DNA of 63,688 bases, counting the filler, from Octopus bimaculoides (lineage: Eukaryota): assembly GCF_001194135.2 (NCBI RefSeq). It is 8 parts of 6 records of this genome, joined end to end, with 100 filler letters (N's around TTAATTAATTAA, not from the genome) between each part and the next. Parts side by side here need not be neighbours in the genome. Positions count along the whole stretch, not along the records: positions 29,495 to 49,294 come from NC_068987.1; 7 more parts are not named here. The stretch is one strand, 5' to 3'. A program made the position numbers and the translations under genes. A model generated the notes under the pieces. It saw only the letters and a list, made by a program, of their open reading frames with translations, made no database searches and was not told the origin of the DNA. Below, piece by piece: positions 25,191-49,646 of this stretch. Positions within the stretch are counted from its first letter, which is position 1, and every line of letters starts with the position of its first letter.

Positions 25191-25379
25191 AGCCTCGGAC
25201 TGGAATGGATGATGTAGGAACAAGTATTTTAGTCGTTTATATTGTTGTATGTTAGAAAAGCAAGTTGTTGGTGTAGAGAGGGGGGAAAAGAGATAAACAA
25301 AGAGACATGGAGGCAGTGAGATTAGAGTGGGGGAGGCAGTGCACGTCATGGCTAAACCATAACTGTTTGAATGTATTGA

Positions 25380-29494: not shown

Positions 29495-29627
29495 TTCAAG
29501 ATATCGTCATTCAGCTCTGGCATTCCGGCAGACACGCTTTCTTGTACAATCTTTTGTAAATACCCTTTGTCTTTCGCTTCAACTGCTTCCTTCAGCTTAC
29601 CTCGTAGGCTATCAGCCGATTTATATC
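29495..29627 (-). CDS. Exon 14, module A2 (partial, runs into gap)
   Basis: tttttcactag|GA TAT...; GYKSADSLRGKLKEAVEAKDKGYLQKIVQESVSAGMPELNDDILK. Confidence 0.8.
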
Positions 29628-31585
29628 CTAGTGAAAAACATTAAACAATGTAAATTGGAAGACATTCTGTCAAACATACATCGATGAAATAGTCAAAGCA
29701 TTATCTTAGATCATTTTAGAAGGAGAGCCACTTATTAGTACGATTACGTTCGTTGCAAATGTAATACACATGTAATTCCATGAACGTTCAATTGAAATAC
29801 TGCCGCAATATTACATATCGTGTAGCCTTTTCGACTGAATCACGTTTACAGAACATTCATACGTTTTGCTTACATAAATTGTCATATGTTAGATATATAT
29901 ACTTTTCTATAGGCAACGATATTTCAAATATCTAACCTCCGCGTCCACCTCCTAAGCTTTCTAGTGCGTCTCTCGCTTTTGACAGATCCCAACTCAATTC
30001 AGGATATGCAACGCCTTCACAGTCTTCAATGATTTGCCTGAGAGCTACTTTGTCTTTCAGTTTTGTCGCTTTTTCTAGCTCATCTCGTAAACTTTCGACG
30101 GTTTTCAAGTCTGGCAAAGGAAGATTATGCACGTTATACTAACTTCGTGTATCAAACACACCAATCATCGGTAAACATAATTATTAATGAAAAGTTTCAA
30201 TAGCCTCATAAAAGAGGCGGTTTCAAATGATGTCTCCATATCATAATAGAAGAATGTATAATATTCTATTAGTTCAATAGGCGTTTGAAAGCAAAATAAA
30301 TGCTATGTACCTTTTGGAGGAGAAATTTTAACGTCTTTCAATAAGTCTCGAGCAACGCTTATGTCTACGTCTAGTTCTGGCATTCCAGCAGCAATGCATT
30401 CGTGAATTACTTTGTCCAATGTATCTTTATCTCCCTGCTTCATAGCAGACTTTAGTTTTCGGCGAAGTGATTCAGGCGTCTTCGTCCCTGACAGAGTATT
30501 TTAACAGCGCAATAAATAAACTTGGAAAAAATTTCTGTATATATCTTTACTGATGTCATGAACACAATACCAAAGTGGAAAAAATAGAAGCAAAAACATC
30601 CGTTTGCAAATATACCCACTTAGATTTTCATGCATAATCACATAGAAACACACAGAAACACACAAGGAACATACGGATAAACACACTCACACACAAACAC
30701 ACAAATACTCTTACACACACACGAACACGCATACAAACACCACGAGAAAACTGGAAGAATGTAACCAGCCCCCTCGTTTTGATGTGTAGTATATATTTGC
30801 ATGTAAGTCAATGTGCAATTTAGTTTAGAGAAAATCTGCACGTAAGTGAAATCAAATATAAGAGTAAGATTGTTTTCTCTGCTCGTATGTATTTGTGGTG
30901 TACATGGATCTGCTTCATTGTATAAAGATATGCCTAACATTTATCGGGGTTGGAATATCCGGAGGCGGGAGCTCCTTCAAGAATTGGTTTCTACGGGGAA
31001 AATAATGATCAAAGGAAGTTGTACCATACAGAGATCACAAATGACCAGAACGTCTAACGATAGGCAGTTCCCAAGAACACGTACTAGCCTCAGTTTTTAC
31101 CGAGGTTCTGGAAACCAAATGTGTATGTATACGAAAGCCCAACTAACCTTTGCCCAATTTCTTAATACCTTCCACTAGCCATCGTCTCTCTGCTGTTATT
31201 AAATGTGAAGAAACATCAAGCAGTATAAATTTAACAATATCCTGTCAAGCACATAGATCATTTGAAACAAGTAACATTTACTAACATAATAAAATCGCAA
31301 CTGAAATATATATGTGGAATAGCTCAAGTTTTAAACATGCATATATGCATACAAGAATCCATCTTCAAAATACAATTCTCGGTGGTAACAATAAATTTTC
31401 GGAAATGTATAGAGAAATTCTTATGATCACTTTTGTAGAAGGTCTTTCATGTTTACAGGATATCTGAATTCGTGTCTAACAGCAGCCTTCGTCGCTTTCT
31501 ATCCAAAGGGTTTTTTAAACACAATATTTATACTATTATTTATAGCTTATATATCTTCTTCAAGATCCAATGTTCCTAAAACAGA

Positions 31586-31618
<33 letters not shown>

Positions 31619-31620
31619 CT

Positions 31621-31660
<40 letters not shown>

Positions 31661-31687
31661 NNNNNNNNNNTGTGTGTGTGTGTGTGT

Positions 31688-31733
<46 letters not shown>

Positions 31734-33426
31734 AGATATACAGACAGACGGACGGACGAGTTGATGGATGGTTGGATGGATGGATGGATGGTTCATTTTA
31801 GTATATGCAATTGCTGAAAATGATTCTACCTCCACGGCCGCCGCCAAGTCTCTCTAATATATCCCGAGCTTTCCGAAGGTCATTACCCAATTCTGCATAT
31901 TCCGCTTTCTCACATTCATGTATGACCTCCTGTATTTTTTTCACATCTTTTCGTTTTCCAGCCATTTCAAGTTGGTCCCGTAAATTATCAGGGGTTCTGA
32001 TGTCTATAAGAATATATATTCAAAAGAAATGTACAGATGCTGAAAATCCGAAACATACTAACATAATTTTAGTCCATTTTAAAATTTACAACAGCTAGGA
32101 ATGACCGTTATTCCTACTACAAACTCTATCAGAGTATCACCTGTTCACCTCTCGCCATGTTTTCAAGAACCGTTTGTTCACTTTTTGTCAAGACTAAGTT
32201 GTTTATTGAAAAGGAACTTTGCTGTCACAGTCATTCTATTTGGAAATAAATACCATCTTACTAGACAATTTCCACAGCATGACCAAAAATAGAATAAGAT
32301 TATATAGCTGCATTGTTTTTCCCGCGAACATTTCCCTTCGTGTTACTACACGAGAAAGAATAAATAACACGACTACCAACGTCATTGTACAAATCTCACC
32401 AAGGAGCAGTTTATTGAAGACAACTTCGAAATTATCAAGAAAAAATTATGAGCTAACTATGGAGCTACAGTATGGTTGGTTGACTGGCTTGAATTAGCAT
32501 TTCAAGCTTTTCAAACCACATTCTGGTGTCTTGAAAAGTGAAGGACACATCGGATAATATAGTCGGCCGAAATACTACTGATCAATCAGAACTTACTCGA
32601 AGTTAATGTACAAGGAACACAGTTTGATGTTTTACATCAGGAGTAAAACACGAATAAATAGCAGGGCAAAAATACAAGGAAGCGATTTGACTCAGTGTAT
32701 ACTACATTGCTTTTTCGCTTTCAAAAATGAAACATTGTTGCTTCCGAAACGTTGATATATACTCTTTTCTATCAGAACTTTATGGCATTCGTACTGTTGC
32801 ACATTGTTTATATTGCATTTATTTATTATCACATTGAAAGAGAACAAAAGCATATTTACTGATATCAAAATTTGAAAGGAAGATATTATTAACCACCATT
32901 ATTAAGCCTGCAAACGGAAGTTCACGTCTTCTTAATAACTACACGAGAAATCACTAAAGCAGTATTATTCAAATTCTGTTTTCCCACTCCCTGTATATCA
33001 ATAAACCAACCCATCTCTCTCTTTCATTATCCCTTTCCTGCATTTGCTCTCTCTCCCTCTTTCTCACACACACTGTCATTGTTACATACTTTGTATGAAA
33101 TAAAATTGTTCTAACCTCCAGTACCACCAGCAAGAATATCCGAAATCCTTCGAGCTTGTTGTATGTCTGAGTCAAGTTCTGGCATACCAGCAGCGACACT
33201 TTGTCGGATAGCTTTAGCCAAAGCATTTTTATCCTTGCTTTCCATAGCACTTCGTAAATTTTCTCGCAGAGAATCAACGGATTTTGTTCCTAATAATGTT
33301 AAATGTTTTTTTTTTACACTTACAACAATAAAGATATATTACTGGACACAATGTCAGTTATTTTTACGGAAAGTTATAACCAATTGAGCTTTTGCCAAAT
33401 AAGTGCTGTTTTGCTGCATGATTAAA

Positions 33427-33479
<53 letters not shown>

Positions 33480-33569
33480 NNNNNNNNNNNNNNNNNNNNN
33501 TGTGTACGTGCGTGCGTGCGTGTGTGTGTGTGCGTGCGTGCGTGTGTGTGTTTGTGTGTTTGTGTTTGC

Positions 33570-33608
<39 letters not shown>

Positions 33609-36600
33609 AGTGACTGATTATAACAATATAATATACCAATATAACGTTGAGTTTTATCATAAATAGCAAAATTAAATGTTGTTAAATGTTTTTCATATCC
33701 AATTAAACTTTGTAAGCTTTCCAGTATATCAAACATTAAATTAGCTAACCTCCAAGACCTCCTCCGAGGCTTTTGAGCGTGTTTCTAGCTTTACGGAGAT
33801 CTGAGCCAAGTTCTGGAAACTCTGCTGCTTCCAATTCTACGATTAGCTTTTCCAATGCATATCTATCCTTCTGCTTTGTGGCCCTTTTCAATCTTCTCCG
33901 AAATGAGTCTGGTGATTTTGATTCTAATGACTTATTTTCTTCAAGTGATTTTAGAACTTCTCTTGCTCTATGAATTCTAGCATCCAGTTCTGGCCTTCCA
34001 ACGCTAATACATTCATTTATAGCATCTTCCAGTCTTTCTTTGTCATTGTCTCTAATTGCTAGATCAATTTTCTCTCGTAAACCATCAACTGAAATAACTC
34101 CTATCGGATAGGAGATGCAACAAAAGTTAAACATTGTCACTTGATTTTCAATTTAATGAAATTTATTCACATTTTTATGGAGGAAATTTCTTTCATTATT
34201 TATATTAAAATTTTCGGGGTAAATGTATAGATTTTAGATGAGTTCTTAACGTTGCTTTCGATTTGATATTGTTTAAACGAAGTAACTGAAGCAGTTCATG
34301 CCATTGAAATATGTTTTGAATGTAATTGTACCAAGAAAAAAATACAGAAAAAGAAACTTATGAAATTAACTTCATCCTTAAAAACAGAACATTGTACAGT
34401 AAAGGACGACATTGATCTTTGGGAGTTTTGTAGTCAACTGAAAAAATGAAAGGTGAAGCAGCACTCTCTCCAAATATTTACTATTCATGCGATACGACTT
34501 TGCATCAATGAGACAGAAATAGACAACAACTATAATTGTTCAGAATGTTCATCAAAAACGTTTGCAAACCTCCATCCCCGCCACCTAAATCTTCTAGGTT
34601 AATACGAGCTCTCCGCAATTCTGAATTCAATTCTGGGTAACCAAGTATTTCACATTCAGCAATGATTTTACTCAGTTCTGGAACATCTTTTTGTTTAATA
34701 GCTTTTGCTAACTGATTGAGTAAAGCAGCTGGACTTTTAACTTCTGCAAGTACAATACATATATTGCGAGCCAAAATATCGAAAAATCCCACAAATAATT
34801 AATTTTAGATTAGTAAATACAATTGTTTCCGATTAAAGTATATATTTCAGTAAACCGACACATTTTTGTATGCAATTATTATTTGTGATAGTTATATTTA
34901 CAATTGCCAGGGTAGAAGACTAATTCTTTGCGAAAATTGAAGTTTGATATCCTTCGTAGATTCAAGATGGAAAGTCTCTGTCTAAAAGGTCAGTCAGTAA
35001 ATATTTAGTGATATAGATAGGAGGGCTGGAGTATCATTGATTCTTTGACGGCAATATATAATATATAACGAATTTTTAACTAGGGATATAAAGAAATATG
35101 TGTCTTATAGTGTTATTCTTTTGATTCTTTCATGCGAAAAAACAAAACGAAAACAAATGTATAAAACATAATGTAAATACAACAAAATTATTAGGAACAA
35201 TTTTCGGGTGAAAATCTAACCTCCACTGCCACCTCCAAGAATATCTGATACACTTCGAGCTTGTTGTATATCGGCTTCTAACTCTGTCATACCGGCAGCT
35301 ACACAATTTCTGATAGTTTTATCCAAATGTCTTTTATCATTTGATTTCATAACAGCTTTCAGATTTTCACGCAACGCGAATGGCGATATACTTCCTATAG
35401 ATCAAATTAAACAATAATGTAAACTAAGTCATTAGAGTACGGATATATTTATAATTCTCTTATCACTGATATTCGAAAGAGATTTAGAAACGATAATACT
35501 ATAATGATAGCAACATTACACTATTGTTTATTCTTAAAACCTAAATTACGAAAATAATACCATATGATGAGGTTTCTAACTTTCAAAATTTTCAAACTAT
35601 ACATGTATTATATTCCAAAACAATATATGAAAGCTTGAAAAAATTAGATTTGTTTTAGTTTTAGAAATACTTTAGAAATAACTTATATATGTAACTCATA
35701 AGAAGAGGGACTTTCTTTGCTAACCTCCTCGACCATACCCTAAACTTTCTAAAGCATCACGAGCGGCACTAAGATCTCTACCCAGTTCTGGATAGAGTGA
35801 TTTCTCACACTCAGATATTAGTTTTTCCAAGGAATACTTGTCTCTTTCTGCAATGGCTTGTGCTATCTCGTCTCGTAGTATCTCAGACGGTTTTGGTTCT
35901 AGAAAAAGAAAATACAAACAAATACAATCTGCAAGTGAAAATAGCGGTTTCCTTCCTCACTATTTTTGGCTGCGTATACGTGTATATATGTGTGTGTGTG
36001 CATAACTACATGTGCGTTTGATGACGCATGCACTGAAAATACACTAGATCTACAGCCAACATTGTTTACGAAGCGTCCTTATGTATATGTGCACTCCTTT
36101 AAAAACCCTGTGTTGGTGCACTCAGTTTCATATATGAACTTGTGTGACAACTCAAAAAATTTAATCATTCAGTATAACTTGCAGTGGAACACAGCAACTT
36201 TTACACTTTAAATGAAAGAACGGCAGCCATACTGAGTTTGCTGCCAGGAAAATTGATAAACGTGGATGTTTTATTAGAGCGCGGAATACTACAATATTTG
36301 CATTGAGAAGTCCCCCCACCCCATATAGACATACGGTGCTAAGAGCACATACATATATCATAGCAGACAAGAACCGTCTGGTATAGTCACCAGAACTACC
36401 AGATCACATGATTTCAGCATACTGCCTTTCTCGGTGGCTTACCTCCTCCCCTAAACCAGTCAAATTTCCCCGCCATCAATATATAGAATAACAGTGACTT
36501 TTCTGTCATTGGTATTGCAAAGAACCAGTAAGCTAATAAAAAAGTATTAGCGATGGAAGCAGTATCAATACTAAAAAGCAGATATATGTTTATGCTATTA

Positions 36601-37590
36601 GGACCGTACATTTATATGAGAGAACCTCTCAAGACGAACGTCACAGCATTCGATGCTCTAATAAAAGATTCGAATTTAGTAGGATATAAAGGCCGCTTTT
36701 CGGTATTAATACAACTTTCATCGTTAATATTTAGTTTTATATAAGAGGGTTGTCTATTGCAACATCAGTGACTTTATAGTTGGCTGCGAGCTTTGGCTGA
36801 TATAAAGGTCACCGAACCACTGGAGAAGCGTAGCACGTTAAAATCACATGATCTGGTAGTTCCGACGCACACACCAGACCGTTCTTGTCTGCTAAAATAT
36901 AGGTCAGTGTTCTTAGTACCATACGTCTATATGAAAGGTCTTCTCAGGGCGAATGCAGTTGTATTCGGCACTCTAATACAGCATCCACGTTTAGTCTAAT
37001 ATAAAGAATACCTTTCGGCATTAATATTGTTTCCGTCATTAATATTTACAAATTGATAAATGTATGCATCTAGGTCCGGTAGAGACATGTATCTGTCATG
37101 TCTTTACGTATATTGCCATATATGTCTGTGACTCATCCGAATTGTTGCCAGAGGTACTGTATCTGTGAATATCCATGTATTTCTATGACTGCATGTCAAA
37201 TATATACGAATGCACCTATGTAAATATATACATAACATATATAATATGAGTGTGCCTAAGTAAATTTCTATGTACACGCCTAAGGAGGTCCAAGATATAT
37301 GTTTATGCGTATGTATAGATACATATATTCTAAAATTTGGACAGACGTAACACAGGAACAAACCTGAAAATTCACACACACAAGACAGGACTTTATAAAT
37401 TACTCGTCATGATATATATATATGTATGTATTTATGAGTTGCGGGAAACTGCTCTTGCAATCCATAAATTAGGAAACTCTAGAGTAGCAAGAGACTACAT
37501 ATGTGTGTGTGTATGTATGTATGTATGTATGTATGTATGTATGTATGTATGCATGTGTGTATGTATGCATGCATGTACGCATGCATGTAC

Positions 37591-37628
<38 letters not shown>

Positions 37629-40103
37629 GGTTCATTGATCATGAAATACAAGCAATTTTTAGGATACGATGTGTTCGATTATATTTCCTACGATCCATAT
37701 GCTAGGAGCAAATGTGTTATCGTTCCATGTTTCTTTCAGTCGTTCCACTACGATATTTTAACAAACTACAAGTGCAGAACAAGTGTAGATAAAGTTTTAG
37801 TCTTATTCAATATACCTTACACGTTATTAGCAATAATTACTGTTACATAAGAAGATACCTTTTAAAGAGATTACATAACCAAATGAACAGAGATTGCATA
37901 ACAATCTTAAAGCTTCAAGTTATATAACAGAAGTGAGATGGTGCTTCGGTAACAACAAATATAACAGTAGTGTAAATATGGGTCGAAGAATTTATTTTGA
38001 TATTAATCTGGTGAAGGTAGAGATTTTTTCACATCATAGTAAAGAGAATTAGTCATTTTTTTCTTTCTCATTAACTCTGTGTTATTAAGTAGAAACAAAG
38101 CTACATATCAGATATCAGGTCACTATAAACCATTGCTACATTTTATTACTCCTATTTGACGTCTTGATTATAATTACCAATCTTCACACATACATCATTC
38201 AATTCAACTATACAATCCTATACAGGTACCATATATGTCAACGAACATAAATATAACTCCTAACATTAACATATACACATTCATTTATGTGATATCTAGT
38301 TAGATGATCCCTATGGAATTACTGGTATCGCATATTTATTCTTTAGTTACAGGTGTTTCAATAATATATAAGTTAAATAAATCAAATCGGAAAATATAAA
38401 TATAGGAAAAGATTATGAATCATTGAATATATAATATTGATTGTATTATTCATTAGGGACGAAAGACTAAATTAACATGTGTAAAACTTAGATGAATTCA
38501 TTTATATATAGAGACAGAAGATTAGATGAGAGGAGGATTCATTTCTTACAGGGAGAGTTTCCTCTAGAAATGCTAATAACAGAAATGGTAATGATGACGA
38601 CTTTTGAGTTTCAGTTGGCAAGATCATGTTAGAAGTTAAATTTGTCAATAAGTTTGTATAACAGACAGTTGTCTGGTCGAGAATGTAAAACAATACTAAG
38701 ATTGTGTATCATAGTACAGGTGGTTAGGACAGCGGACTCGCGGTCGGAGGATCGCGGTTTCGATTCCCAGGCCGGGCATTGTATATGTTTATTGAGCGAA
38801 AATACCTACAAAGCTCCACGAGGCTCCAGCAGGTGTACTCTTTGGCCCCAACTTTCTCTTATTCTTTCTTCCTGCTTCTTGAGTAATGCTGGGGGGTACA
38901 CATACGCCATAGAAACCGGGAAACCAGGTCCACGAGCCTGGCTAGGCTTTAAAAGGGGCGCATAATAAAATCATTGTACAGAGTCTCATAAATTAACTGG
39001 GATGGGCATCTCTAGAGTAGCGTCAAAGAAAACCAAAATGATTAGAGAAAGAACAAAGTTGAAAAGGAGGTGGAAAGAAGAGAGTGAGACAGGAATAAAT
39101 TGAAAGTGTAAGAACAATAGCTAGTCTCGTATGAGGGAATGAGTGTATATAAATAGACTTAAAAGGATGAGAGGCTTTTGTAATTTGCAGTAATAGTGGT
39201 GGTATATGAAGATGTAAAATAGTCTTATAATACTTTATAATTAAATTCATAATTAAAAATAATGGTAAAAGATTAATGGTAAAAAAAAAAACTAATATTA
39301 ACCAGAACAGTAAAAGTGTACATAAATATACATACGTACATCTATACATATATCTGTACAAAAATATAAATATAGAAACACATATATTCCTAGATATAGT
39401 CAGGCATACATCCACAAACACACCAATATATACACGCACATACTTATAGGTATATATATAAGCACAAACATCTGCTCTGACTCCTAGCCATATACCTAAA
39501 TGCGCATGTAAATGAATTTGTAAAGTCATGCAGACGTGTGTATATACATGTATCTCGTAATCAATTAAATATTTCATGAATACAGCATTATGAAATAGTT
39601 GTTAGAAGCACAATAAAAAGAAGTGTAAAACAAAGGATATTTAGAATCGAGAAAATAAGTTGATGCATAAAGTTGAGGTGATAGGACAGTACGACAACCA
39701 CTTGGAGATGTGGTAGAGATGAGTAACGAAATTCATGCAGCATAATTCATATGTGTATATGCATATGCTTGCATTTATTTATTCCAATACTGTTTATGAG
39801 TAAGGTAAACAGAATTTTAAGAATGTTTTATTAATCCGATATCTGCATCTAGTTGTTAGCTCATTATGCTTATCAATGAGATCCGCTGAAAATTTCAGAT
39901 GAATTCAGCAGTATGTTGGAGTTCTTAGATCTAAGAACTCCACCACACTGCTGATCACGAATAAATCGTATTTTATCTCCTGTCTTTCTCATATTCATTT
40001 AATACAGTAGTACCTCGGTTTACGAACGCCTCTGATTACAAATAAATCGTACTTTATATATATATATATATCTAGCTATCTAACTATATATATATAAACA
40101 CAT

Positions 40104-40149
<46 letters not shown>

Positions 40150-42350
40150 NNNNNNNNNNNNNNNNNNNNNNNNNNNNNNNNNNNNNNNNNNNNNNNNNNN
40201 NNNNNNNNNNNNNNNNNNNNNNNNNNNNNNNNNNNNNNNNNNNNNNNNNNNNNNNNNNNNNNNNNNNNNNNNNNNNNNNNNNNNNNNNNNNNNNNNNNNN
40301 NNNNNNNNNNNNNNNNNNNNNNNNNNNNNNNNNNNNNNNNNNNNNNNNNNNNNNNNNNNNNNNNNNNNNNNNNNNNNATATATATATATATACGGTAAAA
40401 AAAGAAAATGGAGGGGATACAAAAATGATATACATCAGCCGGTAGACATTCTATTGTCTATTTATTCTAAAACATAAGGAAGTATTATAAGAATGTATAC
40501 ACATGCAAAGACTGTGTGCTACACAAATATGTAGTAGTAATACATAAAAGAATAAAATATTAAAAGATTAAGAGATCAGTTCCTTACGGCCGTTTCTGCC
40601 AAGAGGCCACGATATCCTCCATGCTACCTCCATCTCTTCAGTGTTGGGATGGGTAGATAGAGTTTGGCTGTTGAGAGTGCCTCTTGGCTTCTTCAGAGGG
40701 TCTAAATAGCCTAAATAGTTAGGATAGCCGAAACATACAAGAGTCAGTTACCAATAGGTACAGTATATTTTTTCTTATTGAAGAGGGCATAAGAAGAATA
40801 CGACCAAAAGTTAGTGTAAGAGGAATAAAATTTCGCAAAATGGATTAGGTATAGGAAAGGGAAACAAGTCATAGACTTCAAGTGTTGCCTTCCAAGATTC
40901 ATGTTATTTTGTCCAGTGGTGGATAGGTGGATACAGTTTTTCTAAGGAGGAATTTTTAAGGAAGGGTAAATTTGGGCAGTGGTTCTTATTTTGCTTACTT
41001 ATAAATACACGTTATGTTTACAGTGATGGGTTTGAAACTATGGTCCGTGTTTCGGTGGTGGAAGTTTATATGTAGGATGCCAGCTGGTACTAAAGAGAGT
41101 ATGGCACCAGGTGGTGTTCATGCTCGCTATTTTTCGATCAACAAGTCCCTGAATCCTTGTGTGCAGTGGGATAGGGGTTATGGTCAGTCCTGCAACCTAA
41201 TTGGTCAGCTATTGTTTTGAAAACTATGACGCGATTCCGGTTCGTTGAGGGCTAACAGATAACACAAAAACAGATCAGATAAATAAATAAGTAAATAACT
41301 AAATGAGTAAGTAAATAAACAAATGAGTAAGTAAATAAATAAATGACTAAGTAAATAAATAAATAAGTAAATAAATAAATAAAAGCCGTGGCCACTATGC
41401 ACAAGTAGAAGAGCAAAATGACATTCAAACTAGATTAAATTAAAGTAAAGTAAAACAAGTAAAAAAAATAAATCAGTATGTGAGTGAGTGCAATAATTAA
41501 AGCAATACGATTAAGGGGATATGATCTTAAGGGACAGCATAAGAAAATAACTTATATATAAAGCACGATTTATTCGATATCAGAGTTGTGCGAAAACCGA
41601 GGTACTACTGTATATTCATACATGTCTACATTTATGCTCGTCTTCCACAAAACCTTATACATTTTCTTCTCTTTTTTACTTCTTCTCCTCCCTTTGTTCC
41701 TATTCTCTGCCATTCAGATTTGTTTTCCATTATTCATTTACTTGATTTTCCTCTCTCCGCTTCTTCATTATTATCTCTGCGTTTTACCTTCCCCTTACAT
41801 ACCTACGCTTTACCTCTCTATGTCCTTTTTCCTCTTCCTCTTTGCTTAATGGGCTGGCTCTCTAGAACCATTCCGACAGTTGCTATATATAGGAGACCTT
41901 TCATTTACTGTTTTTATTTGAAAATGCTTGACTGAAAGTAGTTTTGTAAGGGCTATGTTACATAACTACAAGAAACATGTGTGTTAAATGTGTATTGAAT
42001 GCGCTTGTGAGTGAGTGTATCAACGAGACAAGATGATAGTTGAATAGAAGTGCGTGAATGTTTGTATATATGCGCATGTAAACGAAAGGCATGGATGGGT
42101 AGGGAGAGGAGTAGTCCAAGGAAGGTATGTGTTTGTGTGAAAGCTTTGTTAGTGTATTGAGGGTTTGCCTGTAAGTGTAGAGATATTGAAAGATTAGATA
42201 AGAGGAGTGGGGATGGAATGGAGGACTAAAATGGGAGGTGCAGGTGGATGTGGGGTAAGTAGATGGGAGGAGAAGCAGAAGAAAGATGTTTGTGGTGAAA
42301 TGCAAGTTATTAAAATTGCATTAGTGAATTTATACGAAAAGACGTGTACA

Positions 42351-42408
<58 letters not shown>

Positions 42409-44435
42409 CTCCTGTGCTTTCTGAAAACGAGTGGAGGGGTTTGCAGCTCTTTACATATTTGTAAATACAAAACTTGTTGCAATACATAACTTATTGATTC
42501 AATGAAAGTTACTGAGATATGTTTCAAAGTTTTTATATATTTGAGTAAGTCTACCATAATACATTGCTTGCAAATAATGAAAATAAAAATAGAGTTATAT
42601 TAAATGGTAATAAATATGCTGTCAAATGAATATAAACAGAAATGAAATATAAATGAAAATGCCTAGAAACATAGATATATTTAGATGGTCTTGGAAACTA
42701 TATATAAGCAACTAGAGCCTTTTTTGCCGTCACTTGTGTGGAGATGAGAAGTGGGTATTAAATAATTATGTCTAAAATATATTGCAGTAAATTGGATTGT
42801 TATTCTAACAATAACTGGACAGAAAAAATTTCGATGTCATTTAATCATTTTGCATTGCACAACTTACCTGAAATTTATTTTATTTATTTATTTATTTATT
42901 ATAATCATATATTCTGTTTATAATATTCTAACAGAATATGATTTTCATTTCAGCACATGAAAGTAAAAACCAACATCAGTTGAGACCTAAAGGAAAAGGA
43001 ATTTATAATTCAAATATGTCTTCTTTATTTCACCATGTCTTCAAATGCTATATTTCTTTGAATTAGAGAGGTCATATATCAATTCTCGAAATTCAATTGA
43101 AGTTGCATGCCATGCATATAGAATGAGATCGTCATAAGAGTAATTTGAAAATCTAACCTGTACTGTTTTGTCTCATATCTTCAAGAACATTTCTTGCACG
43201 TTCTATGTCAGAATCTAGTTCTGGCAGTCCAGCAGTGACACATTCATTAATTACTCTGTCTAATTTGCCTTTGTCACCTTCCCTCATTGCGTTTCTGAGA
43301 TTGGTTCGCAGAGAGTCAGGTGTTTTATTTCCTAACAATGAAATACATATGACAGTGAGAATTTCATGAAATTGTGCGTGTTTATGAAACCATGCCATGC
43401 AGAAAATCGAGAAATACGTATCCCGTAATTGATTCTTTTGTGATAATCTAATTCATGCACATTTATATTTCAACTTTAAAAGAAATATTCACTAGATCAT
43501 TCAATAAAACAGTGCATGCACTAAGTGAATGAAAGATGAACTTCTATTTAGATATGAATCACACATCTAAAATGTACAATCCCGTAAAATGGAAAAATCG
43601 CTATATTCGAAGAAACATTGAACTAAATTTAACTCGAAACGCCATAAACACATAGGAAAGGAAAAAAAAACAGAAGATAAGTGAGAATAATTTCTTACGC
43701 GAAAATAAATGTATGAAAGAATGAAACTAGGAAATGTTAGAAACTGCTAATGTTAGTTATAAATTGACATAAGAAACAACTATTTCACACCGGCAATATT
43801 TAGCAATTTTTTATGACAACATAATATAGAAAACCTTGCTGCTGACCTCCACGACCACCACCAAGAGACTCTAGAGTATCCCTAGCTTTACAAAGATCAG
43901 CTGCTAGTTCTGGATAACCAGCTTCTTCACTGTCTGCAATGGCTTTCTGCAGTTCACCAATATCTTTCTGACGAATAGCACGAGCCAACTGACTCTGCAA
44001 TGTATCTGAAGGTACTACATCTAGTAAAATCGAAGAAAGAAGTAATTAAATATTGATTTATAACATCGGCACCACGCATTTTGGGGGAGGATAAAATTGA
44101 TTGAATAAATTGCAGTATTCCACTATTATTGCATTTTTAATGATCCTAGAAGGGTGAAACTATCACAGTGGGATTTAAACTCAGAACGTAAATGTTTGTA
44201 ACTCTATACCTTAATGTATTTCATCCAACTCCCTAACGGTGAAATATGAATAAAATCTATATATACTTATTATTGCAAATAAATGTTTATTTCTAAATAT
44301 CTAAAAAGATAAAACGTCTGTGATGTAAATATTAACGTTAAAATTTATCTGGAATACAAAGACTAAAAAGCTATAGCAATCAAGAATATCATGAAATTTT
44401 AAATCCTTATATTCTACAAAGTATACTGTGAGAAT

Positions 44436-44469
<34 letters not shown>

Positions 44470-47400
44470 TTTCTCTCTCTCTCTCTCTCTCCTTTTCTCT
44501 CTCTATCTTCTCTTTACAAGCTTAAATGTCTATAGAGGGACAGCGAAAGTCTTTCGCATTACATCGTGTGTTAATTTATCTTGCATCAAGCTGCCTAATG
44601 AAATTATATATAATGAAACCCGTGATTTATATAGTAACAGGTTTGAAACTATGAGCATAAGATATCGTAACATTTTACATTTGCAAGTGCAACATCGTAA
44701 CGTTCATCTTTATCTGAGAATACTTTCTTGATCATAAAAAACCCAAAAGTAAGTAACACATCTCATAAATGTAAATTTTAGGTTTGAGAGCTTATGTCAA
44801 AGAAGTAGATAGTTAGCAGATACCAACAATTTCATTAAGATTGGTATGTTGTATATTCTCAGATAGCAATTAATAATGTTTGATGTGATAATATAATACC
44901 TTTAAACATGTAAAATTTGCCAACGATCCACTTAAAGAATCTAAAATGCACTGCCTTTAATGTACTTCAGCATTCAAGTAAAATATATATTTTGAACAAC
45001 CTCTCAAGAAATACGCAATATCTTAGGTCAATAATCACGATCAAATATCAGCTGATTAGTCTATTGTGTAACTGTACAGTAGAATAAAGGCTAACCTCCA
45101 GAGCCACCACCAAGAATATCTGATACACGTCTTGCTTGTTGTATATCAACATCCAGTCCTGGCATGCCGGCTGCTACACTTTCTTGGATAACTCTATCCA
45201 ATTCACTTTTATCTTTAGTTTTCATTGCATCTTCAAGTTTGTCTCTTAACATATCTGCAGATATTGTTCCTGAGTGTAGATAATAATTCAAGTAAGAATA
45301 AGTGATAAAATATACTGGAAATATAAGAATTGCCTACTCTTAGTACAAAGAGTATTAATATATAACATTTCTTCAAAACTTCAAATAAATTATTTTTGCA
45401 TAACATATTTCATATAGAGCATGCGGACATATTAACGTATTCGTTTAATATATATATGTATGGTTTTGAAATAATACTGTATAAAGAGACTGTAATTTTG
45501 GCAAAGACAGTATTAAATAAGAAAAATCTGCATAAGGCGTTTTGCAATCATACAACTTATTCTATGGTAACTGCAACTACTTATACAGTAAAATTGATAT
45601 TTTTTTAAATAGGCTAAAGCCATGTTCATATTTCTCGGGCATTTTAAATTCATTTTGTGGGACTAAACCTCGAAGACTGTCGTATCAGGATATGTAATAT
45701 AATCGCCCTTGACTCTCATTAATGCGATTAAATATTGGTATCCCATTAAGACACAAACACTCTAATGTTTGTAACTAAAGGAAAATAAGTTATTGTGTCT
45801 CACCATACTTTACATCTTGTTCTACAGAATACACAATGAATTGTGTAATGGGAACACTAAATTTTGTATTGCAGGATACAGTCTGTGACACGAAAGCATA
45901 TTAATTTCTTGTAATAAGTTTTGAAATGCTTCAATGAAACAGGTATTTACCAAAAATTTATATTTGAACAATTCTATGTTACTTTGCCAATCTTTTAGCC
46001 AACTGACAATCGACAAGTTTTAAAACATATTGCATGAGAACGATGTAAGTTAGAAAATTGGGAAAAAGATGAAATTACTATATATAAATATATATATATA
46101 TATAAATAATGTTCAAATTTTATACGACCGCTAAAAAAAATAGACAGACAGACATATATACATACAGACAAACAGACAAACAGATAGATAGATGTAACCC
46201 ACAAGTTTAAAGACTGCGTCGCAGCAATATAAATTATACTATATATATTTCGAATCACACAAAATGCTAACCTCCACATTCTCCACTCAGGCTCTTCAGA
46301 GTATCTCTGGCTTGCCGTAAATCAGAACTCAGTTCTGGATATTTGGCTTCTTCACATTCGCGGATTAGTTTCTCAAGCAGTGGCCTGTTTCTTTCTTTGG
46401 TTGCTTTCTTTAGTTCATTACGTAAGGAAACGGGCGATCTCGAACCTGACAAGAGATAGTTGCTAAGATTAAATAAATGCTCGTCTTTGTCCTGTTGTTT
46501 TTCTTGTTTTAGATATTAGATTGTTTTTGTTTTTGGTTATTTCCCATGAATATGAGCGTTATTATGATAGGACTTCAAATGTAGTTGTTTCATTTTACTA
46601 CGATAGAACTAGAATATTGCGTTAAATGTTTAATTATAACGATTACAAAATTGTTTACTTAATTTTTTCTTTCGTTTTTTATCTTCTGCTTATATTTAAA
46701 TAGAAAAATTGAGGATGAGATGCATGCGTACGTGCTCGCACATGCATGTGTATGTGTGCGCGCGTATGTGTATAACCTTTTATCTTTTGCTTGTTTCAGT
46801 CATTATACTGCGGCCATCCAGGGACACCGCCTTGAAAAACTTTAGTCGGACGACACGAGCATTTTGTTTAAGGTTGGAACTTAATCTATCGGACTCTTTT
46901 GCCGAGCTGCTAATTTACAGGGAAGTAAACACACTAACACCTATTGTCAAGCTGTGTGAGTCAAGACAAACGCAGACGTATCGATTTATTTTTCTACAAG
47001 CATCTGTAAATGTAATTGCCCTACTGAATGCTACCGCGAAAATATGTACGCATATCATAGTAATTTGATGTGTAGGTGTTTCATTTCTTGTCCATTGCTT
47101 TACTATTACACTAAGTTTAGCGCTCTACAATACAGTTACATTACCTGCTACCAATATCAACAAATATGATTAATAATGGTCAAATTTCCAACAACCACCT
47201 ACTGACATATTTTGACCATTTATTTCTTTATTTCTGCTATTCTTATATCTGTTTCTAGAAACGAACTGAATTTTTGTAGCTCATCTTTCGTAAAGATAAT
47301 TCTTTCAAATTAAGTAATAATCCGCTCACATGAGAATTATGTAGAATGAATAATGCAAATATCACTAATATCATTTTGTGTTGGATTTTCAATGTATTGT

Positions 47401-47612
47401 GCTCTGGTTACGTATTATAGCTTATATCATAGCGCATTTTACATGCGGTTTTAAGAGTTTAACACGGTAAACTATATTGAACTCTAATATAACTGGCTAC
47501 CTATTATAATGATATATGTGTATACATACTTGTATGTGTATGTGTAAATTATATGTATTATTTATATAGTACGTAATATATACATATATATTACTAGACC
47601 AAATATTATAAA

Positions 47613-47646
<34 letters not shown>

Positions 47647-48279
47647 TAGACCAAATATTATAAAAGGGTATTATTTTGAACTGAGAAAAAGATACGGCGA
47701 GCGATTGAGAGATGAGCAATATATACACACATACATGTGTGTGTAATATATACATACACACATATTTTTGTCTGTGTTTCCAGTGTTGTCCGAGCTTTAC
47801 AAGCTCATCTAAAAGCTCTGGATTACCAGCTTCGCTGTTTGCAATGACGTTTTGGAGTTGATCAACATTTTTCAACCGATTAACACGAGTCAATCGACTA
47901 TGTAATATTTTTAAATGTACTACATGCCAGATGCATAAAAGGAAGTGTGTGGATGTATATGTATAGGTATCTGCATGCACAGGAACATAAATAAATAAAA
48001 ACAGAAAGCTTCCTAATTATCAGGGCTGCTTTTATCAAGCAGAAGCTATATGGAAGGAAGATAAGATCCGTACGCTGCAGTATGTTAATTTGACTCACTG
48101 ACCTGGTTGGTGCTTCTCACGTAAGTCGTGGAGTAATTCTCTTGCTTTCTGCACATCTGTGTCTAGTTCTTGCAGTCCAGCTGCTACACATTCGTTTACT
48201 GCACTTTCTAACTGGGCTTTATCTCCATGTTGCATAACGTTTGATAGCATTTGTCGTAATGCTTCTGGTGATTTACTTC
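29495..48279 (-). CDS. Multi-exon gene segment encoding at least 15 tandem ~58-aa helical modules (about 860 aa visible); start and end not established
   Basis: All 14 exons have AG acceptors and the 13 complete ones have GT donors, all phase 1, so they splice into one open frame (2445 nt for the 13 complete exons). Shared pattern: LR..L..A....D...L...I.E(C/S)..AG.PEL..D(I/L)..AR..L. Confidence 0.88.
29937..30110 (-). CDS. Exon 13, module B1 (174 nt)
   Basis: ctttgccag| ... GGAG|gttaga; DLKTVESLRDELEKATKLKDKVALRQIIEDCEGVAYPELSWDLSKARDALESLGGGRG. Confidence 0.9.
30311..30487 (-). CDS. Exon 12, module A1 (177 nt)
   Basis: ctctgtcag| ... AAAG|gtacat; GTKTPESLRRKLKSAMKQGDKDTLDKVIHECIAAGMPELDVDISVARDLLKDVKISPPK; not in the ORF track. 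Confidence 0.88.
31830..32003 (-). CDS. Exon 11, module B2 (174 nt)
   Basis: ttcttatag| ... GGAG|gtagaa (weak donor); DIRTPDNLRDQLEMAGKRKDVKKIQEVIHECEKAEYAELGNDLRKARDILERLGGGRG. Confidence 0.82.
33116..33289 (-). CDS. Exon 10, module A2 (174 nt)
   Basis: cattattag| ... GGAG|gttaga; GTKSVDSLRENLRSAMESKDKNALAKAIRQSVAAGMPELDSDIQQARRISDILAGGTG. Confidence 0.88.
33750..34100 (-). CDS. Exon 9, fused modules A1+B1 (351 nt = 177+174)
   Basis: atccgatag| ... GGAG|gttagc; GVISVDGLREKIDLAI...LEENKSL/ESKSPDSFRRRL...LKSLGGGLG. Confidence 0.9.
34570..34743 (-). CDS. Exon 8, module B2 (174 nt)
   Basis: tacttgcag| ... GGAG|gtttgc; EVKSPAALLNQLAKAIKQKDVPELSKIIAECEILGYPELNSELRRARINLEDLGGGDG. Confidence 0.88.
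35221..35394 (-). CDS. Exon 7, module A2 (174 nt)
   Basis: gatctatag| ... GGAG|gttaga; GSISPFALRENLKAVMKSNDKRHLDKTIRNCVAAGMTELEADIQQARSVSDILGGGSG. Confidence 0.88.
35725..35898 (-). CDS. Exon 6, module B1 (174 nt)
   Basis: tttttctag| ... GGAG|gttagc; EPKPSEILRDEIAQAIAERDKYSLEKLISECEKSLYPELGRDLSAARDALESLGYGRG. Confidence 0.9.
36258..36992. repeat. Intronic inverted repeat (arms 36258-36443 and 36807-36992) with a third, more diverged tandem copy between them
   Basis: gaactaccagatca versus tgatctggtagttc, aaacgtggatg versus catccacgttt, and agcagacaagaac versus gttcttgtctgct are exact reverse complements. Confidence 0.8.
38714..38966 (+). mobile_element. tRNA-headed SINE
   Basis: gtggttaggacagcggactcgcgg...ggtttcgattccc...tttattgagcgaaaa; the head is shared with the 16.4-16.8 kb SINE. 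Confidence 0.75.
40005..41610. mobile_element. Tigger/pogo-like MITE with ~55-bp TIRs and TA target sites, inflated by internal insertions
   Basis: TA|cagtagtacctcggtttacgaac ... gtgcgaaaaccgaggtactactg|TA. Confidence 0.7.
43158..43331 (-). CDS. Exon 5, module A1 (174 nt)
   Basis: cattgttag| ... ACAG|gttaga; GNKTPDSLRTNLRNAMREGDKGKLDRVINECVTAGLPELDSDIERARNVLEDMRQNST. Confidence 0.9.
43847..44020 (-). CDS. Exon 4, module B2 (174 nt)
   Basis: ttttactag| ... GGAG|gtcagc; DVVPSDTLQSQLARAIRQKDIGELQKAIADSEEAGYPELAADLCKARDTLESLGGGRG. Confidence 0.9.
45096..45269 (-). CDS. Exon 3, module A2 (174 nt)
   Basis: tacactcag| ... GGAG|gttagc; GTISADMLRDKLEDAMKTKDKSELDRVIQESVAAGMPGLDVDIQQARRVSDILGGGSG. 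Confidence 0.9.
46272..46445 (-). CDS. Exon 2, module B1 (174 nt)
   Basis: tcttgtcag| ... GGAG|gttagc; GSRSPVSLRNELKKATKERNRPLLEKLIRECEEAKYPELSSDLRQARDTLKSLSGECG. Confidence 0.9.
47777..47925 (-). pseudogene. Decayed B2-type pseudo-exon
   Basis: Aligns to exon 4 at DNA level (ATGTAGTAC..., GAGCTT-GTAAAGCT versus GATCTTTGTAAAGCT). The acceptor position reads GC instead of AG, there is a 1-bp deletion, and the 3' end and donor are lost. Confidence 0.82.
48103..48279 (-). CDS. Exon 1 of the visible array, module A1 (177 nt)
   Basis: attgatcag| ... CCAG|gtcagt; GSKSPEALRQMLSNVMQHGDKAQLESAVNECVAAGLQELDTDVQKARELLHDLREKHQP; not in the ORF track. Confidence 0.88.
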
Positions 48280-48869
48280 CTGATCAATAAAGTGTGGAAA
48301 ATTCCCAAGACTTTAGATATAATTTTACCAAAATAATCTTTCTGTAAAGAAGCATGCAGATGAGATAACAGAAATGCATGCTGGTGACTCCATGCCTTTA
48401 TACACAAAGTTGACTCACTTTTAAAATTTCCATATAGCTAACTGAAGCATTGATCTCTTGACCATAAGCTTTAGAAATAACTACACTGTGTATATAGAAT
48501 TCAAGAGTAAACTTCATATGCGCAGAAATCAAAATGTAGGGTATGCATTTTTTTTTTAATGCTCGTTAAAACATTTTAATTAAAAAGTGTTGATTTAAAT
48601 ATTTAGTATTATAATTTTCTCTCCCCTCTCGCGAGCTCTCTATTTCTTTTCTCTCTCACCCTGTCACTCTCTCTCCACACACACACACACACACAGACAC
48701 ACACATATACACACACACACACACATACACACACACACACACACATACACACGCACATCATATATCAAAAGTTGACAGTGTACACTGAGTTTCAGCCCAT
48801 CCGACTAACCCTTGCCAACGTGGAGTACAGTCGTAAAGTGATGATAATGATCATGAATATAATATATAT

Positions 48870-49293
48870 ATATATATATATATATACAAATAATATGTAA
48901 GTATATGCATATATACCCACATGTATGTACACACTTACATCTACATGTATATATAGATGCATATCTGGGTACAGGGCGTCACAAAAAAAAACGTGGACAA
49001 AATGAGAACAGAGTACTGAAAACACACAGGCCACATAGAGAACATTTCCTTCATCAGCTGCCACCATTCTAAAACTAAGTGTTTCGAAGAGTAGGGCAGG
49101 ACGCATTGCTAGAATGGCTCTTCCCGCGGAAACAAATTAAATTTGTAATGCGGAAAAATATAGTGGCGAACAGAAAACACGACAGGAGAACGAAACAATG
49201 AAAATAAACAAGAAGGGCTAGTAGGGTCAGAAGTGAAAAAAATATATATGTATGCAGAACGCTGTGATGTGACGAACGGAAAAGATAAGAAGA
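48870..49293 (-). mobile_element. Dispersed ~430-bp element carrying a permuted hammerhead-like motif (copy C host)
   Basis: Colinear and similar to 60226-60660; its 3' tail GACGCCCTGTACCCAGATATGC is also similar to the 10.28-kb tail. Confidence 0.75.
49051..49123 (-). ncRNA. Permuted hammerhead-like motif, copy C
   Basis: GAAGAG-CCATTCTA-GCAAT-GCGTC-CTGCCC-TA-CTCTTC-GAAACAC-TTAGTTT-TAGAATGG-T-GGCAG-CTGATGA. Confidence 0.65.
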
Positions 49294-49646
49294 ANNNNNN
49301 NNNNNNNNNNNNNNNNNNNNNNNNNNNNNNNNNNNNNNTTAATTAATTAANNNNNNNNNNNNNNNNNNNNNNNNNNNNNNNNNNNNNNNNNNNNTTTTGT
49401 GAATGAAACAAACTAGATCCTAAATAAAAAATGAATGCTTAATATGACAAATTTTCAGATTTTTTACGTCATTTTAAAAAGGAGCTGATTCTGTGTCTCA
49501 AACTAACCAGATCCAAGTATAGTGCATACCATCCTCCACAATTTGCTACTCATATGAAGTACATATGTATTTTAACAATTTCTATCAAATACACTCTCTT
49601 TCTTGAGCATAAAAAATCCTCTTCCTTGATGACAATAACTTATATA

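What the first reader, a model, noticed from the sequence alone, without database searches (positions are those of the whole stretch)
29932..46272. Splice donors overlap an in-frame stop (G|GT TAG): possible recycled terminal exon and length ladder
Seen: 8 of 13 donors are GTTAG (exons 2, 3, 5, 6, 7, 9, 10, 13), so unspliced read-through ends cleanly in Gly-stop. Exons 1 and 12 stop one codon later, and none of the 13 uses the usual GTAAG/GTGAG. Exons 4, 8 and 11 (all B2) keep GT but not TAG, which shows the donor is the conserved element. Inference: the ancestral unit was a last exon ending GGT TAG whose GT was recruited as a donor. Intron retention or intronic polyadenylation could then give nested C-terminal truncations, or these could be alternative last exons.
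Basis: partly seen in the sequence, partly recalled or inferred. Interest (0 to 1): 0.7.

Follow-up and report, generated by a model that had tools for sequence, protein, structure and literature searches.

The report
Stop-containing splice donors, octopus repeat gene
A giant octopus gene built from dozens of near-identical-sized exons uses an unusual splice signal (AG|GTTAG) at most exon ends, kept by selection across species, so that any unspliced copy stops exactly at a module boundary; why it is kept is not yet known.

Summary
On the minus strand the piece holds 14 exons, 13 of them complete, from the repeat array of an octopus KY-like (transglutaminase-like) giant gene. Most exons are 174 nt, all are phase 1-1, and each encodes a 58-aa three-helix module plus a Gly linker. 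Eight of 13 donors read G|GTTAG and none reads GTAAG or GTGAG. All three N gaps lie in intronic microsatellites and do not affect the frame.

The motif belongs to the whole family. Across 54 homologous exons from the window, two ENA contigs and O. bimaculoides, 37 donors are GTTAG and +3 is T in 43. Fourfold sites in the same exons are saturated, so +3 T is being maintained by selection. Nine non-repeat donors in two octopus KY-family genes all carry A or G at +3. An O. vulgaris gene model uses exactly these junctions.

The "recycled terminal exon" origin is not supported. Abalone has the same repeats as internal phase-1 exons with ordinary donors.

The "length ladder" idea is untested. Poly(A) signals are not enriched in the introns, donors without TAG have no compensating early stops, and only one RefSeq model ends at such a TAG.

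My best reading is a maintained, sub-optimal donor that also acts as an immediate stop. That the stop is the selected feature is inferred, not shown.

The parts
48098..48279 (-). Donor CAG|GTCAGT at 48102-48098. Read-through gives Gly-Gln-stop.
   Evidence: Orthologous to O. vulgaris P0170 residues 1179-1232. The same donor occurs in the related species contig L007.
47780..47908 (-). Decayed B-type pseudo-exon (...NVDQLQNVIANSEAGNPELLDELVKLGQ...). It has no AG|GT donor and is absent from the O. vulgaris model.
46267..46445 (-). Exon X1, 46445-46272, 174 nt, type B. Donor GAG|GTTAGC. Read-through gives Gly-stop.
45091..45269 (-). Exon X2, 45269-45096, 174 nt, type A (...SDILGGGSG). Donor GAG|GTTAGC.
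43842..44020 (-). Exon X3, 44020-43847, 174 nt, type B'. Donor GAG|GTCAGC, with no immediate stop.
43153..43331 (-). Exon X4, 43331-43158, 174 nt, type A' (...MRQNST). Donor CAG|GTTAGA. This is the last exon with an orthologue in the O. vulgaris model P0170.
35899..43157 (-). The 7.3-kb X4-X5 intron. It contains the 228-N gap (40150-40377) inside CA/TA microsatellites, plus other simple repeats and a SINE-like fragment.
35720..35898 (-). Exon X5, 35898-35725, 174 nt, type B. Donor GAG|GTTAGC.
   Evidence: The orthologous donor in L005 is identical.
35216..35394 (-). Exon X6, 35394-35221, 174 nt, type A. Donor GAG|GTTAGA.
34565..34743 (-). Exon X7, 34743-34570, 174 nt, type B'. Donor GAG|GTTTGC. 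The TAG is lost, and the same loss is present in the related species.
33745..34100 (-). Exon X8, 34100-33750, 351 nt. It is a fused A'+B double module produced by intron loss. Donor GAG|GTTAGC.
   Evidence: L005 still has a donor after the A' half.
33111..33289 (-). Exon X9, 33289-33116, 174 nt, type A. Donor GAG|GTTAGA. The preceding intron holds the 33480-33500 gap inside (TG)n.
31825..32003 (-). Exon X10, 32003-31830, 174 nt, type B'. Donor GAG|GTAGAA, which looks like GTTAGAA with one T deleted. The following intron holds the 31661-31670 gap inside (TG)n.
30306..30487 (-). Exon X11, 30487-30311, 177 nt, type A' (...KISPPK). Donor AAG|GTACAT. Read-through gives Gly-Thr-stop (TAG).
29932..30110 (-). 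Exon X12, 30110-29937, 174 nt, type B. Donor GAG|GTTAGA.
29495..29627 (-). Exon X13, type A, cut off by the edge of the piece. The orthologue P0015 in a related species ends ...GGSGG*.

Best explanation
Shown. The piece is part of the repeat array of an octopus giant KY-like / ltd-1-like (transglutaminase-like domain) gene on the minus strand.
- Each 174-nt phase 1-1 exon encodes one 58-aa three-helix module plus a Gly-rich linker. The intron sits in the linker.
- The exon ends carry a family-specific, non-consensus U2-type donor, AG|GTTAG(C/A). It has invariant A-2 and G-1, conserved A+4 and G+5, T instead of the usual purine at +3, and C or A instead of T at +6.
- These donors are working internal donors, not gene ends.
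- The motif arose in an already internal exon in the cephalopod lineage. It was then amplified with the array and has been held by purifying selection since.

Inferred. The donor is kept deliberately sub-optimal. TAG is the only stop codon compatible with A+4 and G+5. With TAG in place, a transcript that keeps an intron stops right after the linker Gly instead of adding a random, often hydrophobic, intron-encoded tail. In this reading the sequence serves as a splice site and an immediate stop at once. Whether the resulting truncated proteins are waste made harmless or are functional isoforms is open.
For: Anatomy: 13 complete exons, all phase 1-1, with GT-AG introns.

Fold: three helices per exon, with low-confidence linkers at the junctions.

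Gene identity: U1 to X4 are 83-95% identical and collinear with O. vulgaris CAI9725887.1 residues 1179-1464. That protein has the Ig-like_KY / transglutaminase-like N-terminus, and its junctions match my donors exactly.

Family-wide motif: GTTAG at 15 of 20 donors in L001, 12 of 14 in L002, 2 of 6 scored donors in L004 and 8 of 13 in the window. In total that is 37 of 54, with +3 T in 43 of 54.

Selection:
- Fourfold sites of conserved Ala, Pro and Gly codons carry 1.7-1.9 bits of entropy.
- The -2 site, a Gly third position, is A in 52 of 54 donors.
- +3 is T in 80%. That gives p about 2e-10 against a 0.37 background.
- T outnumbers C at +3 by 43 to 5.

Controls:
- All 9 non-repeat donors in O. 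bimaculoides and O. sinensis KY-family genes have A or G at +3.
- With the first seven of those control donors, Fisher p was 4e-6.
- The abalone orthologous repeat exons use G|GTGAGA and G|GTATTT at the same phase-1 position.

Link to linkers: GTTAG is found at 30 of 36 GGAG| linker ends against 7 of 18 other ends (p = 0.0017).

Donor strength: a +3A>T change in a human donor causes intron retention (PMC8371685, abstract seen), which fits GTTAG being a weak donor.

Orthologous donors are unchanged in a species with 83% intron identity.
Against: - No transcript or protein data were examined. Use of these donors rests on gene models.
- If an early stop were itself selected, donors lacking TAG should have nearby substitutes. 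They do not. Their median in-frame distance to a stop is 10 codons, against 12.5-13 in the other two frames. Three of 17 have a stop within 2 codons, where 3.5 are expected.
- The base after TAG is C in 22 of 54 donors, a poor termination context. The +6 constraint as a whole (C or A in 44 of 54, T in 7) is not explained by a stop codon.
- Nonsense-mediated decay would remove intron-retaining mRNAs whether the stop is immediate or 10 codons later. The selective gain from immediacy is therefore unclear.
- The donors are paralogues, so the counts are not fully independent.
Confidence: 0.5

Rival explanations
1. Specialised or weak donor for regulated splicing, with the stop incidental. T at +3 and non-T at +6 are kept to lower U1/U6 complementarity, or to form a UAG/YAG site for an hnRNP A1-type repressor. 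That would let the symmetric 174-nt cassette exons be skipped or included to tune repeat number. Under this reading the in-frame TAG is a by-product.
For: - Both +3 and +6 avoid the base complementary to U1.
- YAG occupies +3 to +5 in 42 of 54 donors.
- All exons are phase 1-1, so skipping any of them keeps the frame.
- The O. vulgaris model has orthologues of U1 to X4 and then skips everything corresponding to X5-X13. Yet X5-X8 are under purifying selection, with 94% exon identity against 83% intron identity.
- An O. bimaculoides model of 5242 aa spans the same array.
- Donors without TAG have no compensating stops.
Against: - A weak donor could be made in many ways. T is favoured over C by 43 to 5, and A+4 and G+5 are retained, which points to the specific TAG triplet.
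- No factor binding was tested.
- The difference between the O. vulgaris and O. bimaculoides models may be an annotation artefact.
Confidence: 0.27
2. The unit began as a terminal exon ending GGT TAG whose GT was recruited as a donor. Today intron retention or intronic polyadenylation at each TAG yields a programmed ladder of C-terminally nested isoforms, or alternative last exons.
For: - Every GTTAG donor gives a clean ...Gly-Gly-stop.
- RefSeq XP_036360725.1 (O. sinensis) ends ...CGG*, and the orthologous O. bimaculoides stop is a GGAG|GTTAGC site.
- Other models also end by reading into an intron (P0001 and P0097).
- GTTAG is tied to linker ends.
Against: - Abalone repeats are internal phase-1 exons with ordinary donors and no Gly-Gly end.
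- The octopus protein has its own non-repeat C-terminal region.
- Poly(A) signals are not enriched after the donors, and 8 of 13 window introns have none in their first 300 nt.
- The termination context is poor, with C after TAG in 41% of all 54 donors.
- The models that end in introns also start in introns, so they may reflect unspliced RNA or prediction artefacts.
Confidence: 0.1
3. Frozen accident. One ancestral exon happened to have GTTAG and the array copied it. The motif persists only because +4 and +5 are needed for splicing and +3 is nearly neutral.
For: - All the exons are paralogues produced by tandem duplication, arranged as a four-exon super-repeat.
- The variants GTCAG, GTTGG, GTTTG and GTTCG are each one substitution away from GTTAG. 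GTAGA could be GTTAG with one T deleted.
Against: - Fourfold sites and intron positions from +8 onward are randomised among the same exons, yet +3 is T in 80%.
- Only 2 of 54 donors have moved to GTAAG or GTGAG, although those would pair better with U1.
Confidence: 0.1
4. Not a working gene: a pseudogenised or misassembled repeat array, so the 'donors' have no function.
For: - There are three assembly gaps and one decayed pseudo-exon.
- No spliced transcript-derived protein was found in the databases searched.
Against: - Thirteen intact 58-codon frames retain the family consensus.
- Exon identity is 94% against 83% for introns in a related species.
- Exons are collinear with an annotated O. 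vulgaris protein.
- The gaps are intronic.
Confidence: 0.03

Closest known systems
KY (kyphoscoliosis peptidase) / ltd-1 / hillarin family of transglutaminase-like proteins
   Same: - The orthologous O. vulgaris protein and the neighbouring O. bimaculoides model carry Ig-like_KY and Transglut_core domains.
- The abalone ltd-1-like protein has the same 55-58-aa helical repeat, in separate exons with an intron at the same phase-1 position.
   Different: - Other members have 1-3 repeats, no Gly linker and ordinary donors.
- The octopus gene has tens of repeats (a 5242-aa model in O. bimaculoides), GGGxGG linkers and GTTAG donors.
- The repeat has no Pfam model.
Immunoglobulin heavy-chain secreted/membrane switch, where a donor G|GTAAA lies just before the secretory stop codon (from established knowledge)
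   Same: A 5' splice site overlaps or abuts an in-frame stop. An unspliced transcript therefore ends the protein cleanly, and a spliced one continues.
   Different: - The Ig case is one site per gene, with a near-consensus donor and a defined competing poly(A) site.
- Here there are dozens of sites, a non-consensus donor, and no enrichment of poly(A) signals.
Selection for early in-frame stops in introns as a safeguard against intron retention (Jaillon et al. 2008; Behringer and Hall 2016; cited from my own knowledge, not read here)
   Same: An in-frame stop close to the 5' end of an intron limits translation of unspliced mRNA.
   Different: - The reported effect is a weak genome-wide bias.
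- Here the stop is inside the donor itself, at a cost to donor consensus, and confined to one exon family.
- Donors lacking it show no early-stop bias.
Module-per-exon repeat genes with symmetric phases, such as titin, nebulin, spectrin-type and collagen genes (from established knowledge)
   Same: One structural module per exon, uniform exon length and symmetric phase. This permits tandem duplication and in-frame skipping.
   Different: I know of no report that those genes have a shared non-consensus donor with a built-in stop.

Membership tests
KY / ltd-1-like transglutaminase-domain gene | Transglut_core (PF01841) and Ig-like_KY (PF23265) domains in the same protein | not testable with these tools
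   The N-terminal part lies outside the piece. It is present in the orthologue, O. vulgaris P0170, and in the O. bimaculoides model P0169 upstream of the array.
KY / ltd-1-like transglutaminase-domain gene | Window exons orthologous and collinear with the repeat region of an annotated member | tested here: met
   U1 and X1-X4 match P0170 residues 1179-1464 at 83-95% identity, in order. X5-X13 match only paralogous repeats, at 41-63%.
U2-type GT-AG intron | GT at +1/+2 and AG at the 3' end, with an open frame restored across the junction | tested here: met
   All 13 introns meet this. The junctions equal those of the O. vulgaris model.
U2-type GT-AG intron | Consensus purine at +3 (GTRAGT) | tested here: not met
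   +3 is T in 9, C in 2 and A in 2 of 13 window donors, and a purine in only 6 of 54 family donors. It is a purine in 9 of 9 control donors from octopus non-repeat exons.
U12-type (minor spliceosome) intron | Donor /RTATCCTT | tested here: not met
   None of the 54 donors resembles it.
Ig-type splice versus polyadenylation switch (alternative last exon) | A poly(A) signal shortly downstream of the donor-embedded stop | tested here: not met
   AATAAA/ATTAAA occur at 2.53 per kb in the first 300 nt against 2.46 per kb in the rest of the introns. Eight of 13 window introns have none in the first 300 nt. Cephalopod poly(A) signals may differ, so this is a weak test.
Fail-safe early intronic stop | In-frame stops enriched near the intron start relative to the other frames | tested here: inconclusive
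   37 of 54 donors have an immediate stop, but only as part of the donor. The 17 others show no enrichment, with a median of 10 codons against 12.5-13 out of frame.
   Abalone repeats are internal, have no Gly-Gly end, and use donors G|GTGAGA and G|GTATTT.

The most novel reading that the evidence does not exclude
The array of about 90 exons could be a programmable ruler. Under this reading, regulated failure to splice at any one of the UAG-bearing donors ends the protein exactly at a Gly linker. That would give a tissue- or stage-specific ladder of beads-on-a-string proteins of set length. The conserved UUAG(C/A) would be the binding site of the regulator, an hnRNP A1-like YAG reader. Coleoid A-to-I editing of UAG to UGG could then reopen individual stops.
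Probability: 0.1. Interest if true: 0.75.

Novelty: new variant of a known kind. Interest (0 to 1): 0.5.

Why it matters
If the +3 T is selected as part of a stop codon, this would be a clear case of dual coding. One pentamer would serve as splice donor and terminator, repeated dozens of times in a single gene and conserved across species. It would also offer a natural system for asking how cells handle intron retention in giant modular genes.

If the T is instead selected for splicing control, the array is a compact set of more than 50 paralogous weak donors sharing one non-consensus motif. That would be useful for studying how 5' splice sites with U at +3 are recognised.

Either way the work defines an unannotated 58-aa three-helix repeat. 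It also shows that current octopus gene models for this locus disagree: 2069 aa, 5242 aa, and short nested models.

Tried and rejected
- Pfam scan of six concatenated repeats: no family found.
- Search of solved structures by sequence profile returned only de novo designed helical proteins. Foldseek of the AF2 model had no hit below E = 0.4.
- First homology search with the 800-aa conceptual protein found nothing. The candidate list was probably swamped by Gly-rich words. A profile without the Gly tails worked.
- blastn of the piece against O. bimaculoides loci L003 and L004 gave no overlap, so the window's species and exact position remain undetermined.
- Look-up of O. vulgaris P0170 DNA: not on record.
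- The library type of the Logan runs SRR118693xx could not be established. The one paper hit was an unrelated accession. I therefore did not count unspliced contigs L005-L007 as evidence of intron retention.
- Local RNA structure around the donor: pairing probability 0.60 against 0.52-0.56 at control positions, so no signal.
- tRNA and Rfam scans of the piece were both negative.
- A U12-type donor was rejected from the sequence. Shifted or bulged U1 registers were considered by eye and do not improve pairing.
- The resemblance of GGTTAG to the telomeric repeat was judged coincidental, as it is only a 6-mer.
Full report
**What is in the piece.** Piece 29495-49294 is AT-rich eukaryotic DNA with many microsatellites. 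Translating the minus strand shows a series of open segments that all encode one roughly 58-aa motif, GxKSPDxLRxxLxxAxKxKDKxxLxKxIxECxxAGxPELxxDxxxARxxLxxLGGGxG. I placed splice sites and obtained 14 exons, which I call U1 and X1-X13.
- Ten exons are exactly 174 nt and two are 177 nt.
- One exon, X8, is a 351-nt fusion of two units.
- X13 is cut by the edge of the piece.
- Every intron is GT-AG and phase 1, so each exon ends with the first G of a codon and the next exon supplies two bases.

**The gaps.** All three N runs lie in introns, inside (TG)n or (CA)n/(TA)n tracts. Each exon is a closed phase 1-1 unit, so unknown gap lengths cannot shift the frame. The exons follow a four-unit order: B, A (...SDILGGGSG), B', then A' (non-Gly tail). 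This order is unbroken across all three gaps. Only a loss of four or a multiple of four exons in the 228-N gap of the 7.3-kb intron would go unnoticed.

**The observation.** It is confirmed in every detail.
- Eight of 13 donors are G|GTTAG.
- U1 (GT CAG TGA) and X11 (GT ACA TAG) stop one codon later.
- X3, X7 and X10, all of subtype B', have GTCAG, GTTTG and GTAGA, with no nearby stop.
- None of the 13 is GTAAG or GTGAG.
- A at -2 and G at -1 are invariant.
- On this strand GTTAG occurs 30 times among 1111 GT sites, and eight of those are the donors.

**What the gene is.** Pfam and sequence searches of solved structures found nothing. A profile of the 15 repeats, searched against 1.8 billion representative proteins, found 231 hits.
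- Most hits are 50-130-aa ORFs called on genomic contigs, that is, single exons read from intron to intron.
- Many of those ORFs end ...GG.
- The named hits are octopus and mollusc proteins: "kyphoscoliosis peptidase-like" (O. bimaculoides), "Transglutaminase-like domain-containing protein" (O. vulgaris CAI9725887.1, 2069 aa) and "ltd-1-like" (Haliotis).

The O. vulgaris protein has a KY-type N-terminus, about 20 repeats and a long non-repeat C-terminus.
- Residues 1179-1464 are orthologous to U1 and X1-X4 at 83-95% identity and in the same order.
- Its junctions (...KHRP|GSRSP..., ...GESG|GTISED..., ...GGGSG|DVVPSD..., ...GGGRG|GSKTPD...) are exactly those my donors predict.
- The GT of GTTAG is therefore treated as a working internal donor in an independent gene model.
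- X5-X13 have no orthologue in that model.
- X5-X8 are nonetheless conserved at 94% in exons against 83% in introns in a related octopus contig, so they are real coding exons.

In O. bimaculoides a 5242-aa gene model spans the same array. The published models disagree strongly on how many repeats are joined.

An AlphaFold model of three consecutive exons gives three helices per exon and low-confidence Gly linkers exactly at the exon junctions. This is a beads-on-a-string protein.

**The donor motif belongs to the family.** I fetched homologous arrays and scored every repeat exon with the profile.
- L001 (ENA contig): GTTAG at 15 of 20 donors.
- L002 (ENA contig): GTTAG at 12 of 14 donors.
- L004 (O. 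bimaculoides): GTTAG at 2 of 6 scored donors.
- The window: GTTAG at 8 of 13 donors.
- Total: 37 of 54.

Base composition at the 54 donors:

| Position | Composition |
|---|---|
| +3 | T 43, C 5, A 5, G 1 |
| +4 | A 46 |
| +5 | G 50 |
| +6 | C 22, A 22, T 7, G 3 |

Only two of the 54 donors are GTAAG or GTGAG.

**Is this inheritance or selection?** The repeats are 26-51% identical in protein.
- Fourfold-degenerate third positions of conserved Ala, Pro and Gly codons carry 1.7-1.9 bits, so they are essentially randomised.
- The Gly third position that forms -2 of the donor is A in 52 of 54 donors.
- Intron positions from +8 onward look like background.
- Against that background, T in 80% at +3 gives p about 2e-10.
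- The near absence of drift to the better-pairing GTAAG or GTGAG also points to purifying selection on +3.
- The paralogues are not fully independent, so the p-values are upper bounds on significance. The saturation of neighbouring neutral sites still argues against pure inertia.

**Is GTTAG simply the local norm?** A small control says no. All nine control donors have a purine at +3 and none is GTTAG.
- Non-repeat exons of the same gene in O. bimaculoides use GTAAGT, GTAAGC and GTGAGT.
- Six donors of the O. sinensis paralogue LOC115211941 are GTAAAA, GTGAGT, GTAAAT, GTATGT, GTAACA and GTACTT.

A genome-wide table would settle this properly and is the first next step.

**Origin.** In the abalone ltd-1-like gene the two clear repeats are separate internal exons. 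Their intron sits at the same place, phase 1, just before the ...LR..L helix.
- They have no Gly-Gly linker, and their donors are G|GTGAGA and G|GTATTT.
- Further exons follow them.
- The first repeat of the O. bimaculoides array has GTAAA.

The exon-intron plan therefore predates GTTAG. The T at +3 appeared in an exon that was already internal.

**Why is it kept?** Several points favour the stop codon being the selected feature.
- TAG is the only stop compatible with the conserved A+4 and G+5.
- T is preferred over C at +3 far beyond the AT bias (43 to 5).
- GTTAG is tied to exons that end in the Gly linker, at 30 of 36 against 7 of 18 (p = 0.0017).
- One RefSeq model (O. sinensis XP_036360725.1) ends ...CGG*. 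In O. bimaculoides the orthologous stop is a GGAG|GTTAGC site.

Several points argue against that.
- The 17 donors without TAG show no early in-frame stops beyond chance.
- C follows the TAG in 41% of all 54 donors, a poor termination context. The +6 preference for C or A is unexplained by a stop.
- Poly(A) signals are not enriched after the donors.
- Nonsense-mediated decay would act whether the stop is immediate or ten codons later.

The +3 and +6 deviations together lower complementarity to U1 and U6. A +3A>T change is known to cause intron retention in a human gene (PMC8371685). All exons can be skipped in frame. A regulated weak-donor role is therefore a serious rival.

I found no local RNA structure.

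**My reading.** This is a maintained sub-optimal donor whose failure is made clean by its built-in stop. I give confidence of about 0.5 to the package as a whole and lower confidence to the claim that the stop is the selected feature. A programmed length ladder is not excluded, but nothing here supports it beyond one gene model.

**Limits.**
- No RNA or protein data could be examined.
- The species of the window is an octopus close to, but not the same as, O. vulgaris. Identity with O. bimaculoides could not be checked.
- The species behind ENA assembly ERZ21867824 (L001, L002) is unknown. Its repeats are at most 71% identical to O. vulgaris repeats. They may therefore be distant orthologues or paralogous arrays.

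Noticed in passing
window 33750-34100 (-); L005:1883-2086: X8 is a fused A'+B double exon of 351 nt. In the related octopus contig L005 the A' half still ends in a donor (CAG|GTTATA), and the alignment with the window breaks there. This points to a recent intron loss in the window's lineage. Similar fused two-repeat ORFs occur elsewhere (P0002-P0006).
   Followed up: partly
window 47780-47908 (-): A decayed B-type pseudo-exon lies between U1 and X1. It matches only the first 43 profile columns, has no AG|GT donor, and is absent from the O. vulgaris model.
   Followed up: partly
window 35899-43157 (-): The 7.3-kb X4-X5 intron is where the O. vulgaris model leaves the window's exon series. X5-X13 have no orthologue in that model although they are conserved as coding sequence. 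The intron also has four AATAAA/ATTAAA hits within 300 nt of the X4 donor, the only such cluster in the window.
   Followed up: partly
L004:10001-18024 (O. bimaculoides CM046607.1): Short RefSeq models nested in the array start inside an intron (MHEIKYQVVFYQLPG...). These are XP_052825468.1 (192 aa) and the O. sinensis model XP_036360725.1 (313 aa). They end either by reading through a GTTGG donor or, in the O. bimaculoides orthologue of the second, at a GTTAG donor's TAG. A 5242-aa model spans the same DNA, so annotation of this locus is inconsistent.
   Followed up: partly
P0007, P0099, P0114, P0131, P0132, P0136, P0137: The same kind of roughly 40-55-aa helical repeat (L..A...D...L..AI..AE.AGL......A...L) recurs in long proteins of protists (Rhodelphis, Breviolum/Symbiodiniaceae). 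No Pfam model covers it.
   Followed up: no
window 38700-38810: A tRNA-like SINE-type fragment (ggtggttaggacagcggactcgcggtc...ggtttcgattccc) lies inside the large intron. ARAGORN and Rfam do not call it.
   Followed up: partly
window donors and L001/L002 donors, position +6 to +7: B-type exons often share GTTAGCA(T/A) and A-type exons GTTAGA(T/A). The constraint or shared ancestry therefore reaches +6/+7, beyond what a stop codon alone would need.
   Followed up: partly
L003:22220-22726 vs 24147-25532: In O. bimaculoides part of the KY N-terminal coding region appears twice, with a 79%-identical extra copy next to an N run. This may be a duplicated or degenerate exon, or an assembly artefact.
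   Followed up: no
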